A stretch of DNA of 62,895 nt, filler included, from Octopus bimaculoides (Eukaryota), in the NCBI RefSeq assembly GCF_001194135.2. It is 5 parts of 5 records of this genome, joined end to end, with 100 filler letters (N's around TTAATTAATTAA, not from the genome) between each part and the next. Parts side by side here need not be neighbours in the genome. Positions count along the whole stretch, not along the records: positions 45,078 to 53,391 come from NC_068982.1; 4 more parts are not named here. One strand, 5' to 3'. The position numbers and the translations under genes were made by a program. The notes under the pieces are model-generated. The model made no database searches and was not told the DNA's origin. It saw only the letters and a program-made list of their open reading frames with translations. Positions 45,078 through 53,391 of this stretch are shown piece by piece (position 1 is the stretch's first letter; each line of letters begins with the position of its first letter).

Positions 45078-46648
45078 TGGACTTGATACCTGTCAAAAGC
45101 TGAATATTGTGTCAATCAACGGTGAAGTGAAGGCAGCTCCAAGCAGGATTGACAGAGATATGCCTATCAAGAACCGACCATCAATCACAAATAAAGAAGA
45201 ACTGATAAGCATGTACCCAGAATGCTTTGACGACACTGTCGGGTGCTTTGAGAAATGTCGATACCACATAACAGTCGACCCCAATGCCGAACCAATTGTC
45301 CACCCACCTCGCCGAGTTCCACTAGAACTAAAAGAGAAGCTGAAGGCAGAGTTGGACAGAATGGAAAAAAAAAAAGAAATAATCACCAAAGTCAAACGGC
45401 CAACTGACTGGGTGAACTCTATCGTAATCAAAGAAAACCCAATGGTACCCTACGAATATGCCTCGACCCAAGAGATCTGAACAAGGCATTAAAACGAGAG
45501 TATTACCCAATTCCAACCCTTGAAGAAATTCCACCATCATTAGCTGGATCCAAGATATTTAGCAAACTGGATGCCAGTAATGGGTACTGGAATGTGAAAA
45601 TAGACAAAGAATCATCGATGCTAACTACTTTCAACACACCCTTTGGCAGATACCGATTCAACCGACTCCCATTTGGATTGAAAGTGAGCTAAGATGTTTT
45701 CCAGCACCAAATAGATGAGACCTACCAAGGCTGCAAGGGAGCAATTGGGATAGCAGACGATATCCAAGTGCATGGCACGAATGAGATCACACATGACTTC
45801 AATTTACATGAAGCTATGGAGAAAACCCGACAAGCAGGTATCAAACTCAATGCAGACAAGTGTGTGATCAAAGCAAAAGAATGTAAATTCTTTGGAATGA
45901 TACACTCTGCAGAGGGAGTAAAACCAGACCCCGCTAAAGTGGAAGCCATCAGAGATATCAAAGAACCCAAAGATAAGAAGGAACTCAGGAGCTTCCTGGG
46001 ACTCATCCAGTACATGGGAGCCTTCATACCCAAGCTGGCCGATCACACTGCAAATCTCCGAGAACTAAACAAAGATGACGTAGAGTTTGATTGGTTTGCT
46101 TCACACACACAGGATTTCAACGCAGTCAAAAAGCTCATCAGTAAGGAGACAACTCTGCAGTCCTATGATAGACGCAAACCAGTAACGCTCCAAGTTGATG
46201 CTTCTATGAGAGGAGTTGGCGCAGCATTGATGCAAGAAGGTAAACCTATTGCATTTGCCTCGAAAGCTCTCTCACCCACAGAGACAAGGTATGCAAACAT
46301 TGAAAGGGAACTCCGGGAAGTAGTATATGGCTGTGAAAAGTTTCATACATACCTGTATGGCAGACATTACAATACTGAATCAGACCATCGCCTGCTCGAA
46401 CAAATATACAGAAAAAAACCTCACAAAAGCACCAGCCAGACTACAAAGGCTACTGTTGAGGCTCCAAAAATACGACTACAATATCAGGTACAAGCCAGGA
46501 AAGGACCTGATATTGGCAGATGCTCTTTCCAGACTATCCTCACATGATAAACAGGAGATGGAAGGACTAAGTGTAAAGGTCCACCACATTGTAAATGTAA
46601 CAAACACAAAGCTGGAACAAATCAGAGAGGAGACCAGCAAAGATGAAC
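45078..46648 (+). mobile_element. Ty3/Gypsy LTR-retrotransposon pol fragment (RT and RNase H), frameshifted
   Basis: PRRVPLELKEKLKAEL, FSKLDASNGYW, GIADDI, LQVDASMRGVGAAL, YANIERE, YKPGKDLILADALSR; several frameshifts and an in-frame stop; no LTR visible. Confidence 0.93.
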
Positions 46649-46864
46649 CTAGAACCATGTGATTTGGGAAGCAAGCTTCTTGCCACACAGCCACTCCTGC
46701 GTCTATATGTGTGTGTGTGTGTGTGTACGCACAGTTAATATGTATACACAAACACATGTAAAATGTCCATTTGTAAAAAAAAGACAAAAGAAAAGAATTT
46801 GAGGTTCACGAATTGTGAAGTTTATAAATGCAAACAGATACACACACGTATAGGTTCAGCTTAC

Positions 46865-46965
46865 CTTGCAATTCGTTGTACATCATAACCAACATCAATA
46901 ATTTGTTTACCTGCGGCTACAGCAATAGTTAACAGGTATCTGCGTGTTAATCTTCGCCTGAGCAG
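46865..46965 (-). CDS. GH18 chitinase exon (LLRRRLTRRYLLTIAVAAGKQIIDVGYDVQRIA)
   Basis: gcaatag| acceptor and AG|GTAAGC donor; phase 0 continues ...FVLLLQ; matches the GH18 LLTAAVAAGK...GYD segment. Not in the ORF track. Confidence 0.88.
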
Positions 46966-47040
46966 CTATTGCAAAATATATGCAAGGTGCAAATGTTTAT
47001 AAATTCATGTGACCAAAGATTTTGACTAACCAGAGAAGTG

Positions 47041-47110
<70 letters not shown>

Positions 47111-47390
47111 NNNNNNNNNNGGAGACAGACACACAGACATGAGGAGACACACACACACAATCAATTCTCTTTTAACGTTTTCTCAAATGTTCTACAATTT
47201 AATCTCTAGTACCCTATAAAAAAAACAGTTTTTGCGGTTTTGCTGATCGCAGACCGTTGACTGTCTCACGCGCTTCCACTCTTGCCATGGTGATGGTTCT
47301 GGTCATTTGGGAAGACAACTCCTGGTTCTCAGAAAGACTCATTCTGAAAATTCACTCAGTGTCTCAAAACTAACTTCAATAGACGTGTAG

Positions 47391-47598
47391 TGGCGCGAAA
47401 TTATAGCCGCCATTACGGAAGTACTATCTGCACATGCGCAATGGACTTGCCTTTCCAGAAGCCCCTTGAGTGTGCATGCGTAGTAAAACTAGTACTTAAA
47501 GAGTTTGTTTCACTTTGTAAGTCTCTTCAGCACGATACCTTCGACGTGACAACACCTTGCTCCTCAACGAAGCACTTTTCACCACGATGCTATCGATA
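47391..47598. promoter_or_regulatory. Housekeeping-type promoter motif cluster
   Basis: TGGCGCGAAA (E2F, 47391-47400), GCCGCCATT (YY1, 47406-47414), CGGAAGT (ETS, 47416-47422), TGCACATGCGCA (NRF1-like, 47429-47440), TATCGATA (DRE, 47591-47598); CpG-retaining unique sequence. Confidence 0.6.
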
Positions 47599-48275
47599 TG
47601 ATGGCTATTTGCTCCTCTGGCATGCATCAAGGAAGCTCTTAACCTTCCAATTCCTTTTAGAACTTAATCAGCGGCTGCTAAGCTGAATGACACAGGATTT
47701 GTAAAACCAAGCATCATCAAAAAATAAAACTTATTTTTATTATGTTGTTAATTGTTCTACTGTTCCTTAATATATAATGCTGTTGAAAGGTGATAGAAAG
47801 AGACTAATGTCTCTATTGCAACAATCAGCCATTTTACATACGCGTCGCATTTTTGTCTCTCTTTCTCATTCGGCAGTTATTTATATTGTTCGTTGTAATT
47901 AGCTAACATCAAATCTGGCAATAATCGTATCAAGTTAAATGTTTATGAGCTTGCTTCCTTTATTCTACACGCATCTTTTTCCCAACAAAGAACCATACAT
48001 TCTCCGCGACCCAAACAAGCATCTACATTTATATAGACCTATAAAGATTCCCATTACAGTATATACAATTCATGCTAACATTCGTACGCTCTGCTGTTAG
48101 GTAAAAATTGCGGAATATACTTTTGCTCGACTTTAGTACGGCACCAATGATCTTAACAGAAATTTCAAAGTGAAATTACCTTAATTACCTTTTCCTATAC
48201 TATGATACATTCCATGCTAAAAAGTTTCATAAATGCTATAATAACAATTAGAAATTATGTAAAACAGTTGTGTAC

Positions 48276-48534
48276 CTGTAAAAGTAAAACAAAATTATAT
48301 TTGTCTTTTGGTGATCCGCCTCTGTATGCTACTGCGGGATATTCCCAGTCAATGTCTAAACCGTCTAAGCTGTAACGATTTAAAAACTTCGAAGCGCTGT
48401 TTAGAAACTCTTCTCTCGACCGTGCAGTGGAAGCCATTGAGCTAAATTTTCTGGCATTTGTACCCCAGCCTCCCACAGAGAGCAATATTTTTAGTTGTGG
48501 GTTGCGTTTCTTTAGACGAACTATTTCATTCAGC
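48276..48534 (-). CDS. GH18 chitinase catalytic exon
   Basis: ttttatatttgaag| ... CAG|GTACAC; LNEIVRLKKRNPQLKILLSVGGW...LDGLDIDWEYP...FVLLLQ with the intact DxxDxDxE motif; phase 2 to 0. Confidence 0.95.
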
Positions 48535-48744
48535 CTTCAAATATAAAAGTATTTAAAATTTGAAAGTGTAGTGTTGGTATATTTCAAATATCGGTTAAAG
48601 TTAACAATTCATAATATTTTAGTTACGCTTGAAATCTGTTAGGACATGAATAACTAAGATAAACCTGAAGTCTGCAGGCAATTATAATCAATAACTACAT
48701 ATCAGATACATTTGTAATTCACCTGGAAATAAAATCAATAACAA

Positions 48745-48905
48745 TAAATATACATTGGTTTCAAATGTTGGCATAAGACCAGCGATTCTTGGGAAGGAGC
48801 TAAGTCAATTATAGCGATCCCCAGTGCGCAACTGGTACTTATAACATCGACGCCGAAAGGGTGAAAGGCAAAGTGGACCTCGGTGGAGATTGAACTCAGA
48901 AGAAA
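48745..48905 (-). mobile_element. SINE family B copy in chitinase intron
   Basis: Reverse complement of the gaggtcgactttgcctttcatcctttcggggtcgat core. Confidence 0.7.
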
Positions 48906-49651
48906 TAGATAAAATAATGCCAGTGGGTTTGTGAAGTTTACTGAATGAACGAATCTATCAATAACTGGGTTTTTGCATAAGCAAAAGCAACAAAACGCAT
49001 ACATACAAACACACACACTCACACACATATACATGAACATATTTATGCAAACACACACACACACACACACACACTCATTATATAATAGCACATAACTAAA
49101 GGAAGTGACGTCAAGTAATCCGGGTGCTATGTTGCTGCCGAAAAGAAAGACTTGCAAAAGGGACCTGCAGCAGACTAGGCTGCAGTGTTGGAGTGTCTAT
49201 CAATGTCAAAAATCAAGCGAAGAAGCCTGTACCCGAGTGTTTTTAAAGGGAAGCAAGGCCTTTCATTAGGCAAATCCTGATCTCTAATCAACGCATTGCC
49301 TTTGCCCCCAAACAAGAAGAATTAGTCTACATAATCTCATACAAACGAAGTTGTAGGTGTTACATTAGAGCTTTCTTTCTCCAACAGTAATATCTAAACA
49401 AAGGCCACAGTTCTCTAACTCCCAGCTGCCGGATGGCCGTTGACTCTACTGGTTTCATCCACCCTTTAACAGATTACGTTTTTTGTCCTGCAGAGTGTCC
49501 AACGAAAATCATCCCCCCACCCCAACAAGCATTGGTAGGGTGGCCGGTTTAGTCGCTGTTGGCCCGACCAGGCAACAAGTTCGACTGGATTACATGTTAC
49601 CAGTAGTATCATACATACATACATACATACATACATACATACATACATACA

Positions 49652-50285
49652 AGGAATACTAGTGGAATGTACCAGTGAAGACCTCAGTAAAATGTAAGCA
49701 CAACAGACCTGATATAATGATTTGGGACAGAGAAGAGAAACTGTGCACAGTTGTGGAAATTATCTGCCCAGCGGATGTTAACATAAAGGTGAAGATCAGT
49801 GAAAAAGAGAACACCTATGCTGAACTATTGAGAAATCTGCAGTTACTCTGCCCAGATTACAAGTTCAGGTTTATACCTGTAATTAATGGGGCCCTGGGAT
49901 ATATAACATACTGCCTAAATAGTAATCTTGAGAAATTAGGCTTCTCAAAAGGAGAAAGGAGAAAGCTAATTCGAAGACTACAAATCCAATCTATCACTGG
50001 AACTGTAAAACTCTGTAAAACTTTCCAGAAGTTTATCATTTAAGTATATATGAGCATGTCTAGATATGTAACTATAGGCACGAGAATACATACATAAAAC
50101 ATACGAATCTGCACATTCATACATACATACATGCATACGTACATACATACATACATACATACAAACAAAAACAAAAATACCCTGTTGTTGATGTTGAAAT
50201 TCCAATGAAGGAGCCTTGGATCTAGGTTAGAAACCGGTTTTTTCTCTACTGGCAAGAAATCTTAAAATAAACTGAATAATGACAT
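49652..50285 (+). mobile_element. 5'-truncated RLE (R4/Dong-like) element with complete 3' end
   Basis: ORF 49675-50043 KHNRPDIMIWDREEKLCTVVEIICPADVNIKVKISEKENTY...IPVINGALG; flanked by (CATA)n on both sides. Confidence 0.92.
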
Positions 50286-50327
50286 ACATACATACATACA
50301 TACATACATACATACATACATACATGC

Positions 50328-50620
50328 ATGTATAACAGGCCGGATATTGTTGTTTGGGATAAACAAGTGAAAGTGTGTGCTGTCACAAAGATCAGCTGTC
50401 CTGTTGATGTGAATATCTCCTCAACAACCAAAGAGAAAAAAAGATATCTATGGACAATTGCTTTGAAACCTCCAGTTTCTATCTCCAGATTATGGATAAT
50501 GACCAAGTGACAATCTGCATAAGCTTTGATTTGCAGTAAAAGAAATCAACCAACTGACTCTTGCACATTAAAAATACAACCTGTAAAGGGAACAGTAAAA
50601 CTCTGCAATACTCAAGTTTA
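50328..50620 (+). mobile_element. Second, more decayed RLE copy in tandem
   Basis: YNRPDIVVWDKQVKVCAVTKISCP directly after the (CATA)n that ends the previous copy. Confidence 0.75.
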
Positions 50621-50732
50621 AAATGCGACTTTGCTTTTGTTATCTCCATTCCAGCGATGGAGTTTTGTATCTTTCTTAGAAATCAGATCCTTCCTCTGAG
50701 GAAGAATTAAAATAATTATAAACAGAAGAGAA

Positions 50733-50790
<58 letters not shown>

Positions 50791-50967
50791 AGAAATGGAT
50801 AATAAGGAGGTATGGAGATGTTGGTGTATTCAGCTGTAATGGAAAATGAGAAAGGGTTGACGGTAGGTGAATTAATCATGAAAGCCTGATAATGCATGTT
50901 CAATATAACATGGACAATGTAACAAACACGGGGCAAGTAACAAGAGTTTGGCGAAAGTTTTACTTAC

Positions 50968-51139
50968 ATTGCAACGTCATTCCACTCTGTCGTTTTCACT
51001 TGGTTCCCATTTAATGTGGCAAAAGCAAATAGAATATGGGTGCATAAGCTTGGATCGATATTATTTGGAATAAATTTTCCTGAACCTCTTCGATACTGTG
51101 ACCAGTTGGTGTAATAGCAGAACAACAACTGCGAAAGAA
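50968..51139 (-). CDS. GH18 chitinase N-terminal exon
   Basis: LSQLLFCYYTNWSQYRRGSGKFIPNNIDPSLCTHILFAFA...EWNDVA; acceptor ttttttcctactcag, donor AT|GTAAGT. AT+G joins in frame to the 48534 exon. An alternative acceptor would start the exon at 51128. Confidence 0.95.
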
Positions 51140-51902
51140 CTGAGTAGGAAAAAAAAAAAACTCTTTTACGGACCACAATTCTTAAACGGGAAGATTGCAA
51201 GGAGTTGAGTCAATAGTTGACTCGTATTTTGTCGCCTACATTTCGATGCGCCAAAACATTTACAAACCAACACCGAACTATAATTAGGTACAAATGTGGA
51301 GTACAACAATATACTCATCTTTCTGAATTGACGGGCACCACTTGTTTTCTTAACGAAACACTTTCAAACTTGGGACACTGGTAGAATGTGTCATATAAAA
51401 CATCTTTTTCTCTTAGCCTTCTTAACAAAAATTTCTACATTGCAAGTTATTTCATGTTAAATTTGTCGTATTTCTAGATCCCAATATACGACTGACTTGC
51501 ATTTCTTTGGTTTGCAATGTCGAGATTAATTATTCCTGAAATTAATGCTTGAAAAGGTTTCCACTTGCTTTTTAATATAAAAGATCTTGAGTAAGTTTTT
51601 GCGATTAGGAGAAACAACTGTATCTACATCAAGTGAATTCAGGGGATACAATGTGGATTCTATCTTTTACTTGTTTCAGTCATTTGTTACTGCGGCCATG
51701 CTGGGGCACCACATTGAAGAATTTTTAGTCGAACAAATCGACCTCAGTACTTTTTAAAGCCTAATACTTATTCTACTGGTTTCTTTTGTCGAACCGTTAA
51801 GTTATAGGAATGTAAACAAACCAGTATCGGTTGTCAAGCGATGTAGTGGGAGACAAACACAGACAAAAGTATATATAGATTATATACAGATATATACATA
51901 CG

Positions 51903-52055
51903 ACGGGCTTTTTTAAGTTTCCGTCTACGAAATACACTCACAAGGCTTTGGTTGGCGCGAGACTTTAGTAGAAGACATTTGACCAAGGTGCCACGCAATG
52001 AGACTGAACCTGTAACCATGGGGTTGGGAAGCAAACTTCTTACCACACAACCACC
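51903..52055 (-). mobile_element. SINE family A head
   Basis: Reverse-complement match to family A. Confidence 0.85.
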
Positions 52056-52170
52056 GCTTCTGGCTTTATAAAAATGCCTCATGTATTTTCTATTTATTCG
52101 CAGCTAAATAACTGCTTTGCTCAGACGCGACCGATGCTTGTAGCTGGTGGGGGTTCCCCATCTATGTTAC

Positions 52171-52264
52171 CCACAAGCATTATACACTTAAAGGCTGAAA
52201 AAAAAGACAGAAAGTAGTGTATAATGTTAGCCAAGAGAGTCAATACTTCGTTAATGCAGGTCAT
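52171..52264 (-). CDS. Candidate signal-peptide exon of the chitinase (MTCINEVLTLLANIIHYFLSFFSAFKCIMLV)
   Basis: Hydrophobic open frame ending in phase 1 at G|GTAACA, which would give ...MLV-VLS-QLLFCYY. The donor is mediocre and the true first exon may lie elsewhere. Confidence 0.25.
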
Positions 52265-52402
52265 ATTTGAGCTTTCCAGAAAGGTAGCGGTTAATCTGGA
52301 GTGAAGTATTTCCTGGAACAGGAAGTTCGTCAAAGAGCATCAGAGATTGTAAATCTAAGTAAATATATATATATGTATAACTGCGCATTCATATGTGTGT
52401 AT

Positions 52403-53002
52403 CATCAGAACATTTGAACCAAGCAGAAAACCTCACTGGCCGGTGTCGTCACCAATTACAGCGACAAACTGAACATTTGCAAGAAGTTCTTAAACTGGAA
52501 TCTGCCAGAGATAATTCCATTGCATATAATGATGTAATGACTGAAGAGTTTTGAGACCTCCAACCAAAGAATATAGAATTCAATCAACAAGCAGAAGAAG
52601 CAAGATCGTTAAAAGATGAAGTTGATGAACTTCGATACTTAGCTTCACAACAAGCAAGAGATGAAACATTAATTTAATGGTATAAAAGAAAATTTGAGGA
52701 AATGGGTGAACTAAGAAATAAAGTGAATGAACGATATGGAAGTAATAACAAACATACTGAAGAAGAAAAAAATTGCTATGGAAACGGAACTGTGCGAGTT
52801 TACCCAGTAGAAGTCTCAACTGGACGTGATGGCGAGCCAGATAACCAAACTTGAGAATGGCTTTGCATACCAAACCCAGAGAGCTGATAAAAATGAAATG
52901 GATTACAGAATGGCTAAAAATGAATTAACTAATCTCCAAAAAGAGAAAAAGAAATTGGAGAATGAACGTGATGCTATGAAAGAGGTTATTAAAAAAGATT
53001 AA
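52403..53002 (+). pseudogene. HOOK: Intronless HOOK-family (microtubule-tethering coiled-coil) pseudogene fragment
   Basis: QLQRQTEHLQEVLKLESARD...AEEARSLKDEVDELR...YKRKFEEMGELRNKV...SQLDVMASQITKLEN...RADKNEMDY...LQKEKKKLENERDAMKEVI aligns by eye with the HOOK1/3 coiled coil. Stops at 52552, 52675 and 52808; frameshift near 52730. Confidence 0.8.
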
Positions 53003-53107
53003 GAGAAAAGCTGTACTTTACAGACACTGACCAGCTTGGAACATCCAGAAACATTTATAGGTTCTCCCTTTGCAGGGACCAAAGTACTGACTTATTAGTA
53101 AAATACT

Positions 53108-53391
53108 CACTTATTAGTAAGATTAAAATAGTCACATTATTAGTAAGATTAAAATAGTCACATTATTAGTAAGATTAAAATAGTCACATTATTAGTAAGA
53201 TTAAAATAGTCACATTATTAGTAAGATTAAAATAGTCACATTAATAGTAAGATTAAAATAGTCACGTTATTAGTACGATTAAAATAGTCACATTATTAGT
53301 AAGATTAAAATAGTCACGTTATTAGTACGATTAAAATAGTCACATTATTAGTAAGATTAAAATAGTCACATTATTAGTAAGATTAAAATAG
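53108..53391. repeat. Minisatellite, 26-bp unit (cacattattagtaagattaaaatagt) x ~11, runs into gap
   Basis: Seen directly; two units share the variant cacgttattagtacg. Confidence 0.95.

What the first reader, a model, noticed from the sequence alone, without database searches (positions are those of the whole stretch)
47391..47598. Housekeeping-promoter motif cluster inside a chitinase intron
Seen: within about 50 bp lie E2F (TTTCGCGCCA on minus), YY1 (AATGGCGGC on minus), ETS (ACTTCCG on minus) and a one-mismatch NRF1 palindrome; a perfect DRE (TATCGATA) follows ~150 bp away. The sequence is unique and keeps its CpGs, and lies between two chitinase exons (48276 and 46965). Donor-like sites face both ways: GTTAGT on minus at 47374 and GTAAGT on plus at ~47517. 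Established: these motifs typify constitutive, often bidirectional promoters, not secreted-enzyme introns. Inference: an active promoter of another gene, or of an antisense transcript, is embedded in the chitinase locus.
Basis: partly seen in the sequence, partly recalled or inferred. Interest (0 to 1): 0.72.

Follow-up and report, generated by a model that had tools for sequence, protein, structure and literature searches.

The report
Promoter-like motif cluster in chitinase intron
A 55-base stretch inside an octopus chitinase intron carries four classic housekeeping-promoter motifs far more tightly packed than chance allows, so it looks like a real or former gene start site, but nothing available here can show that it is active or what it would transcribe.

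Summary
They lie in the 1.3-kb intron between GH18 chitinase exons B (48276-48518) and C (46864-46970) of an octopus gene.

Four motif classes within 60 bp are expected about 1e-6 times per piece. Even under the block's own GC- and CpG-rich composition, only about 1.4 are expected per 2.7 Gb.

The supporting arguments are weaker:
- CpG retention is locus-wide (o/e 0.8-0.96), not specific to the block.
- The donor-like hexamers occur at chance frequency.
- "Unique" could only be tested against 28 kb of octopus DNA.

On the minus strand the order is NRF1-like, ETS, YY1/TISU-like ATGGCGGC, E2F. That is the usual layout of a short-5'UTR housekeeping promoter and points along the chitinase strand, not antisense.

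No coding exon, known RNA family, stable RNA fold, transposon feature or repeat copy was found.

Best reading: a genuine or recently genuine RNA polymerase II promoter module. Activity, product and copy number are untested. Interest is modest.

The parts
47391..47400 (-). E2F consensus TTTCGCGCCA (TTTSGCGC core)
   Evidence: Exact match. There is only one other TTTSGCGC in the piece, at 51248.
47406..47414 (-). YY1 core AATGGCGGC, TISU-like. Its ATG (47413-47411) opens a 13-codon frame, MAAIISRHYTSIE.
   Evidence: Exact 8-mer ATGGCGGC, unique in the piece. TISU/YY1 elements lie downstream of the TSS up to +30 in one orientation (PMC2518114). The four bases before the ATG fit the TISU consensus poorly (my reading).
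47416..47422 (-). ETS core ACTTCCG (CGGAAGT on plus)
   Evidence: Exact match, unique in the piece.
47430..47439 (.). NRF1-like palindrome GCACATGCGC (9 of 10 bases of GCGCATGCGC)
   Evidence: It is the only site in the piece within one mismatch.
47474..47480 (.). Second NRF1-like half-site GCATGCG
   Evidence: A weak, half-site match only.
47591..47598 (.). Palindrome TATCGATA (the insect DRE)
   Evidence: Exact match, unique in the piece; 0.07 expected per shuffled piece. A role outside insects is not established (own knowledge). My search of molluscan papers for the word listed none that hold it.
47378..47640 (.). GC-richer block (GC 0.46 against 0.32 in the rest of the intron) that holds the motifs
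47369..47413 (-). Hypothetical first exon (ATG at 47413 through GAA at 47375) plus donor-like GTTAGT (47374-47369). It ends in phase 0, as chitinase exon C begins.
   Evidence: Read directly. The donor is weak (T at +3, A at -1) and the phase match has a 1 in 3 chance. This part is inference only.
47517..47522 (+). Donor-like GTAAGT
   Evidence: There are 3 such hexamers in the piece, about the chance number.
48276..48518 (-). GH18 chitinase exon B (catalytic DGLDIDWEYP), followed by donor CAG|GTACAC
   Evidence: tblastn, E 6e-21; ORF.
46864..46970 (-). GH18 chitinase exon C (LLTIAVAAGKQIIDVGYDVQRIA), preceded by acceptor ...TTGCAATAG|
   Evidence: tblastn; sequence.
47044..47120 (.). (AC)n microsatellite ending in a 10-N assembly gap (47111-47120), about 270 bp from the cluster

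Best explanation
The block is a compact RNA polymerase II promoter module of the housekeeping (ETS / NRF1 / YY1 / E2F, TATA-less) type. It is either still in use or was until recently. Its main direction is the minus strand, the same strand as the chitinase.

Proposed layout, read 5' to 3' on the minus strand:
- an NRF1-like site (47439-47430)
- an initiator-like TGCAGA around 47430
- an ETS site (47422-47416)
- a YY1/TISU-like ATGGCGGC (47413-47406) about 16 nt downstream of the proposed start
- an E2F site (47400-47391)
- TATCGATA and a second NRF1 half-site 60-180 bp upstream

What is shown: the motifs, their order and spacing, and their strong non-randomness.

What is inferred: that transcription starts near 47420-47435 and runs towards lower coordinates. 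The product would be a short or unannotated transcript, either non-coding or an alternative 5' exon. Divergent plus-strand transcription may accompany it, as is usual at such promoters.
For: - Four motif classes fall within 60 bp, against a maximum of 2 in 300 shuffles. Expectation is about 1e-6 per piece and 0.3-1.4 per 2.7 Gb, even under the block's own composition.
- 20 kb of real O. vulgaris DNA shows only 4 scattered single hits of the library.
- Four of the five motifs are exact matches to strict consensus, so there is little decay.
- The minus-strand order NRF1, ETS, YY1(ATGGCGGC), E2F matches the known position and orientation bias of the TISU/YY1 element just downstream of the TSS (PMC2518114). 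The factor set matches CpG-island and bidirectional promoters (PMC4730256).
- The block is GC-richer than its intron (0.46 against 0.32).
- It has no similarity to the repeats that are readily seen in the same piece and in L001.
Against: - There is no transcript, chromatin or conservation evidence of any kind.
- No downstream exon was found. No frame of 47160-47760 has a protein relative, there is no Rfam family, and the putative transcripts fold no better than shuffles (z 0.69 and 0.24).
- The minus-strand donor GAA|GTTAGT is weak.
- Unique DNA on both sides keeps CpG o/e at 0.73-0.96. Bodies of broadly expressed octopus genes are methylated (PMC9476566), and the 20 kb next to an LSM gene has o/e 0.28. 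That argues against a long, broadly expressed transcription unit starting here.
- The motif vocabulary comes from vertebrates and insects and has not been validated in cephalopods.
- The motif library was chosen after seeing the finding. With a vocabulary of about 100 motifs, the chance expectation rises several thousand-fold, to roughly 0.01-0.03 per piece.
Confidence: 0.4

Rival explanations
1. Inert copy. The block is the promoter or 5' end of a housekeeping gene, or of a low-copy retroelement (LTR or LINE 5'UTR with an internal promoter). It arrived in the intron by duplication or transposition and is not used here.
For: - The piece is full of imported sequence: a HOOK processed pseudogene, a Ty3/gypsy fragment, two LINE tails and SINEs.
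- The block is a GC-richer island of about 260-450 bp next to a microsatellite and an assembly gap.
- No downstream gene was found.
- Octopus DNA outside methylated gene bodies loses CpGs slowly (PMC9476566), so CpG-rich motifs could survive without selection.
Against: - There are no copies in the piece or in 20 kb of O. vulgaris DNA, where the abundant repeats show up at once. That sample would miss families below several thousand copies.
- No transposon protein, LTR ends or poly(A) tail were seen.
- The one candidate target-site duplication is at chance level: 47.5% of shuffles give one.
- There is no protein similarity to a parent gene.
- The motifs are nearly undecayed, whereas the pseudogene and SINEs nearby are 20% or more diverged.
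Confidence: 0.3
2. The main product is an antisense (plus-strand) transcript, or another gene on the plus strand, starting near 47445-47500 and using the GTAAGT at 47517.
For: - The same motif set characterises bidirectional promoters (PMC4730256).
- CGGAAGT and the NRF1-like site read equally well on plus.
- A GTAAGT lies about 70 nt downstream and an AATAAA at 47723.
- An 82-aa ATG frame with a good Kozak context starts at 47442 (my reading of the sequence).
Against: - The orientation-specific YY1/TISU element points the other way (PMC2518114).
- GTAAGT occurs at chance frequency.
- The plus-strand frame has no relatives and no Pfam hit.
- Plus-strand downstream DNA (47641-48730) has CpG o/e 0.88-0.93, so there is no sign of a methylated, broadly expressed gene body (PMC9476566).
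Confidence: 0.12
3. Chance. This is a GC-richer intronic stretch that happens to contain several short CpG-bearing words. A reader with a large motif vocabulary recognised them as a theme.
For: - The library and window size were fixed after the fact. With about 100 candidate motifs, the expectation per piece rises to roughly 0.01-0.03, and higher across a whole scan.
- There is no independent functional signal.
Against: - Expectation under the block's own composition is 4e-6 per piece.
- All four motifs belong to one small, coherent class and sit in the canonical order and orientation.
Confidence: 0.1
4. An intronic regulatory element of another kind, such as an enhancer, silencer or boundary element (YY1 or TATCGATA-type), acting on the chitinase or a neighbouring gene without initiating a stable transcript.
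For: The block sits in an intron of a probably tissue-specific gene. YY1 is implicated in chromatin looping, and TATCGATA overlaps boundary-factor sites in insects (own knowledge).
Against: ETS, NRF1, E2F and a TISU-like ATG in tight promoter order is not typical of tissue-specific enhancers. Nothing here tests this reading.
Confidence: 0.08

Closest known systems
TISU-type (YY1, short 5'UTR) TATA-less housekeeping promoters of mammals, e.g. PSMD8 (PMC2518114)
   Same: ATGGCGGC core in a single orientation, placed just downstream of an ETS site and a plausible initiator, with no TATA box. The ATG would give a 5'UTR of about 16 nt.
   Different: The four bases before the ATG (CGTA) fit SAAS poorly. 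No protein continues from the ATG beyond 13 codons. The organism is a cephalopod, where TISU has not been described. No TSS data exist here.
CpG-island / bidirectional promoters enriched for GABPA(ETS), NRF1, YY1 and E2F (summarised in PMC4730256)
   Same: The same factor set, tightly clustered, in a GC-richer segment that retains CpGs.
   Different: It is not a CpG island relative to its surroundings (o/e 0.96 against 0.93 next door). There are no flanking head-to-head genes. It lies inside an intron.
Internal promoters of retroelements (LINE-1 5'UTR with its YY1 site; LTR U3 regions)
   Same: A short, self-contained cluster of ubiquitous-factor sites, including YY1, that can sit anywhere in a host gene.
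   Different: No element body, no terminal repeats or target-site duplication above chance, and no further copies in the 28 kb available.
Drosophila DRE/DREF housekeeping promoters
   Same: An exact TATCGATA about 170 bp upstream of the putative minus-strand start.
   Different: It is a single copy and distant from the core. DREF-type use of this word is known from insects, not molluscs (own knowledge).

Membership tests
Housekeeping-type RNA polymerase II promoter (ETS/NRF1/YY1/E2F class) | Tight cluster of the cognate binding motifs, beyond chance | tested here: met
   4 classes in 60 bp; shuffles reach at most 2; expectation 1e-6 to 4e-6 per piece.
Housekeeping-type RNA polymerase II promoter (ETS/NRF1/YY1/E2F class) | Mapped transcription start sites, open chromatin or H3K4me3 | not testable with these tools
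   No expression or chromatin data are reachable.
Housekeeping-type RNA polymerase II promoter (ETS/NRF1/YY1/E2F class) | A downstream transcription unit (exon, ORF or known RNA) | tested here: not met
   No protein relatives for any frame of 47160-47760. No Pfam hit. No Rfam hit in the block. Fold z-scores 0.69 and 0.24. First exons of about 13 codons or fewer, and novel non-coding RNAs, would escape these tests.
Housekeeping-type RNA polymerase II promoter (ETS/NRF1/YY1/E2F class) | Conservation of the block at the orthologous site in related species | not testable with these tools
   No orthologous locus could be fetched: searches found nothing. Only one unrelated 20-kb O. vulgaris locus was obtained.
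CpG-island promoter | CpG o/e and GC clearly above the flanking DNA | tested here: inconclusive
   GC is higher (0.46 against 0.32), but CpG o/e is 0.96 against 0.93 in the adjoining intron. The whole locus appears unmethylated.
TISU element | SAASATGGCGGC within +30 of the TSS, single orientation, ATG used as start codon | tested here: inconclusive
   ATGGCGGC matches 8 of 8 and only the -4 position of the SAAS prefix matches. The TSS is unknown. The frame runs 13 codons to a weak donor, or 24 codons to a stop.
Transposable-element promoter (LTR or LINE 5'UTR) or transposon end | Multiple copies in the genome | tested here: inconclusive
   No copy in the other 7.1 kb of the piece or in 20.3 kb of O. 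vulgaris, where the SINE shows 6 or more copies. The sample is too small for families below several thousand copies.
Transposable-element promoter (LTR or LINE 5'UTR) or transposon end | Element body, terminal repeats or target-site duplication | tested here: not met
   No transposon protein adjoins the block. The inverted and direct repeats are short. The best candidate target-site duplication arises in 47.5% of shuffles. The SINE profile finds nothing significant.
Processed pseudogene / retrocopy | Similarity to a parent mRNA or protein, plus a poly(A) tail | tested here: not met
   No protein similarity. No A-run at either edge. By contrast, the HOOK fragment at 52393-53002 is detected easily.

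The most novel reading that the evidence does not exclude
A vertebrate-style TISU/ETS/NRF1/E2F housekeeping promoter is active inside the intron of a tissue-specific octopus chitinase. It could act in two ways. It could drive divergent transcription whose antisense arm overlaps and modulates the chitinase. Or its 13-codon first exon could splice in frame (phase 0 to phase 0) onto exon C, making a signal-peptide-less GH18 isoform that lacks the catalytic motif. Either case would show that this promoter grammar, including the short-5'UTR translation element, operates in cephalopods.
Probability: 0.08. Interest if true: 0.45.

Novelty: new member of a known kind. Interest (0 to 1): 0.25.

Why it matters
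If active, this would be an intragenic promoter of the constitutive type nested in a secreted-enzyme gene. It would be a small, concrete case for studying overlapping transcription and promoter grammar in cephalopods, where promoter architecture is little characterised. It would also flag an unannotated transcript. If it is an inert copy, it illustrates how promoter-like sequence can persist in a genome where most CpGs are unmethylated. Either way the consequence is local and of modest general interest.

Tried and rejected
- **Coding exon or nested gene.** ORF segments from all six frames of 47160-47760 were searched against 5.8 billion proteins and exhaustively against 1.84 billion representatives. 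There were no hits. Pfam on the 98-aa and 42-aa ORFs found nothing.
- **Known RNA gene.** Rfam at E<=1 gave nothing in the block, there are no tRNAs, and the putative transcripts fold no better than shuffles.
- **Diverged copy of the abundant octopus SINE.** A weak 22-nt resemblance (D6) was followed up with a profile built from 8 copies. It found nothing significant.
- **Insertion flanked by a target-site duplication.** AA[A/T]TGTTCTAC at 47185 and 47750 is at chance level: 47.5% of shuffles give such a match. A TG...CA pair with a 5-bp TCAAA repeat, seen by eye, was judged equally unconvincing.
- **Orthologous or same-genome loci.** Five exact-product look-ups of window ORFs found nothing.
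- **JGI metagenomes.** A motif-anchored pattern found nothing. A control with the octopus SINE consensus also found nothing, so that collection holds no octopus DNA and the negative result means nothing.
- **Close chitinase ortholog.** The best hit was 43% identity. That tool returned only proteins shorter than about 1.75 times the query, so full-length octopus chitinases may simply have been out of reach.
- **CpG o/e step at the block as a sign of a methylated gene body downstream.** The low values to the left are explained by the gypsy fragment and the microsatellite; unique DNA there is 0.73.
- **C/D-box snoRNA at 47719-47668 (minus).** It is the only such pattern in the piece, but 0.17 are expected by chance and there is no Rfam support.

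Full report
**What is in the sequence.** The piece (45078-53391) is octopus DNA.
- A LINE-tail ORF at 49675-50043 matches predicted proteins of Octopus vulgaris and O. bimaculoides at 79-82% identity.
- A tRNA-derived SINE at 51663-52054 has at least six copies in a 20-kb stretch of O. vulgaris chromosome OX597824.1, fetched as L001.
- On the minus strand lie three exons of a GH18 chitinase:
  - exon A, 50976-51125: FCYYTNWSQYR...
  - exon B, 48276-48518: ...DGLDIDWEYP..., ending CAG|GTACAC
  - exon C, 46864-46970...AVAAGKQIIDVGYDVQRIA, after ...TTGCAATAG|
- The finding lies in the 1305-bp intron between exons B and C. That intron also holds an (AC)n microsatellite and a 10-N assembly gap at 47111-47120.

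**Check of the observation.**
- E2F TTTCGCGCCA (minus), 47391-47400
- YY1 AATGGCGGC (minus), 47406-47414
- ETS ACTTCCG (minus), 47416-47422
- NRF1-like GCACATGCGC, 47430-47439, one mismatch
- TATCGATA, 47591-47598
- GTAAGT (plus), 47517
- GTTAGT (minus), 47374 down to 47369

Each of YY1, ETS, NRF1-like and TATCGATA is the only such site in the 8.3-kb piece.

- The cluster has 4 classes in 60 bp and 5 classes in 220 bp.
- 300 dinucleotide-preserving shuffles never exceeded 2 classes.
- The analytic expectation is about 9e-7 per piece and 0.3 per 2.7 Gb.
- A Markov model trained only on the GC-richer block gives 4e-6 per piece and 1.4 per 2.7 Gb.
- 20 kb of real O. vulgaris DNA shows four scattered single hits and no clustering.

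The library was chosen after the fact. A vocabulary of about 100 motifs would raise the expectation several thousand-fold, to about 0.01-0.03 per piece. Even so, the thematic coherence and canonical order make chance unlikely. I put it near 10%.

- CpG o/e in the block is 0.96. The rest of the intron is 0.93, exon B plus flank 0.88 and the exon A region 0.80. By contrast the LINE fragments are 0.21-0.24, the gypsy fragment 0.44 and L001 0.28.
[quoted passage not shown] Methylation is concentrated in the bodies of about 14,000 broadly expressed genes, and promoters, transposons and about 17,600 genes are unmethylated (PMC9476566).
- CpG retention here therefore marks an unmethylated locus, as expected for a tissue-specific gene. 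It does not mark a CpG island. What sets the block apart is its GC content (0.46 against 0.32).
- GTAAGT occurs three times in the piece, about the chance number.
- 'Unique' holds within the piece and against L001. Those 28 kb can only exclude very abundant repeat families.

**Anatomy and direction.** Read on the minus strand, the order is:
1. NRF1-like site
2. an initiator-like TGCAGA
3. ETS
4. YY1 as ATGGCGGC
5. E2F

TATCGATA and a second NRF1 half-site lie 60-180 bp upstream. This is the layout of TATA-less short-5'UTR promoters. There the YY1/TISU element sits within +30 of the start site in one orientation, and its ATG is often the start codon (PMC2518114).

From that ATG (47413) the frame reads MAAIISRHYTSIE and then meets GAA|GTTAGT. 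It ends in phase 0, and exon C begins in phase 0. An in-frame junction is therefore possible, but that has a 1 in 3 chance, the donor is weak, and the product would lack both the signal peptide and the catalytic motif. I treat it as a curiosity.

The factor set also fits bidirectional promoters (PMC4730256). Some plus-strand initiation is plausible. However, the only orientation-specific element points along the chitinase strand, not antisense.

**Search for a product.**
- ORF segments from all six frames of 47160-47760 have no relatives in the word-indexed search of 5.8 billion proteins.
- The exhaustive search of 1.84 billion representatives also found none.
- Pfam finds nothing in the 98-aa plus-strand or 42-aa minus-strand ORFs.
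- Rfam at E<=1 finds nothing in the block, and there are no tRNAs.
- The putative minus and plus transcripts fold no better than shuffles, with z 0.69 and 0.24.
- The lack of CpG depletion in unique DNA on either side argues against a long, broadly expressed and therefore gene-body-methylated transcription unit starting here (PMC9476566). Short transcripts, or the first part of a gene, would be exempt from this argument.

**Search for a mobile-element origin.**
- The block has no similarity to the rest of the piece.
- It has no match to a profile of the SINE.
- No transposon protein adjoins it.
- The best candidate target-site duplication, AA[A/T]TGTTCTAC at 47185 and 47750, arises in 47.5% of shuffles.
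- The piece does contain much imported sequence: a HOOK processed pseudogene, a Ty3/gypsy fragment, two LINE tails and SINEs. A low-copy inert import therefore remains a serious rival.

**What could not be done.** No orthologous or same-genome locus could be fetched. JGI metagenomes contain no octopus DNA, as the control shows, so the negative pattern scan is uninformative. Genome-wide copy number, cross-species conservation and all expression or chromatin evidence are therefore missing.

| Reading | Probability |
|---|---|
| Genuine or recently genuine Pol II promoter module oriented along the minus strand | about 0.4 |
| Inert duplicated or transposon-borne copy | about 0.3 |
| Chance | about 0.1 |
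| Another kind of regulatory element | about 0.08 |

It belongs to a known kind (intragenic or alternative promoter), has no demonstrated product, and is of modest interest until copy number, conservation and 5'-end data are checked.

Noticed in passing
window 52393-53002 (+): Fragment of a HOOK-family coiled-coil gene with no introns, several in-frame stops and at least one frameshift. It is a processed pseudogene (Pfam PF05622, E 1e-19 on the stitched translation).
   Followed up: partly
window 53099-53391: 26-bp tandem repeat (TAAAATAGTCACATTATTAGTAAGAT), 11.3 copies at 95% match, running to the edge of the piece.
   Followed up: no
window 51663-52054 (minus orientation) and 46644-46706: tRNA-derived octopus SINE and a head fragment of a second copy. 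There are six or more copies in 20 kb of O. vulgaris. CpG o/e is 0.89, much higher than in the LINE fragments.
   Followed up: partly
window 45109-46662 (+): Ty3/gypsy-type pol fragment (RNase H domains PF17919 and PF17917) split over several frames. It lies in the chitinase intron downstream of exon C.
   Followed up: partly
window 49675-50043 and 50328-50620 (+): Two 3' fragments of a LINE, with a conserved RPDI(M/V)(I/V)WD... C-terminal region. They are followed by (ACAT)n and (AC)n tails respectively. CpG o/e is 0.21-0.24.
   Followed up: partly
window 48729-48920: Unnamed repeat with three copies (69-82% identity) in the 20-kb O. vulgaris locus L001.
   Followed up: no
window 47719-47668 (-): The only C/D-box-like pattern in the piece: UGAUGA, then 46 nt, then CUGA, with a 4-bp terminal stem. 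It is on the chitinase strand, upstream of the motif cluster. 0.17 are expected per shuffled piece and there is no Rfam hit. Probably chance.
   Followed up: partly
window 47111-47120: 10-N assembly gap inside the (AC)n array, 270 bp from the motif cluster. The join between the block and exon C rests on scaffolding.
   Followed up: no
window 46864-51125 (-), chitinase exons: The best protein match to the three exons was only 43% identity (41% to an O. bimaculoides chitotriosidase-like protein). No start codon or signal peptide lies in the ORF that holds exon A. Either this paralogue is unannotated, or the search missed it: it returned only proteins shorter than about 1.75 times the query.
   Followed up: partly
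L001 19405-20327 (-): An LSM-domain gene adjoins the O. vulgaris LINE copy. The 20-kb locus has CpG o/e 0.28, far below the chitinase locus (0.60 overall, 0.8-0.96 in unique DNA). This fits the mosaic methylation described for octopus (PMC9476566).
   Followed up: no
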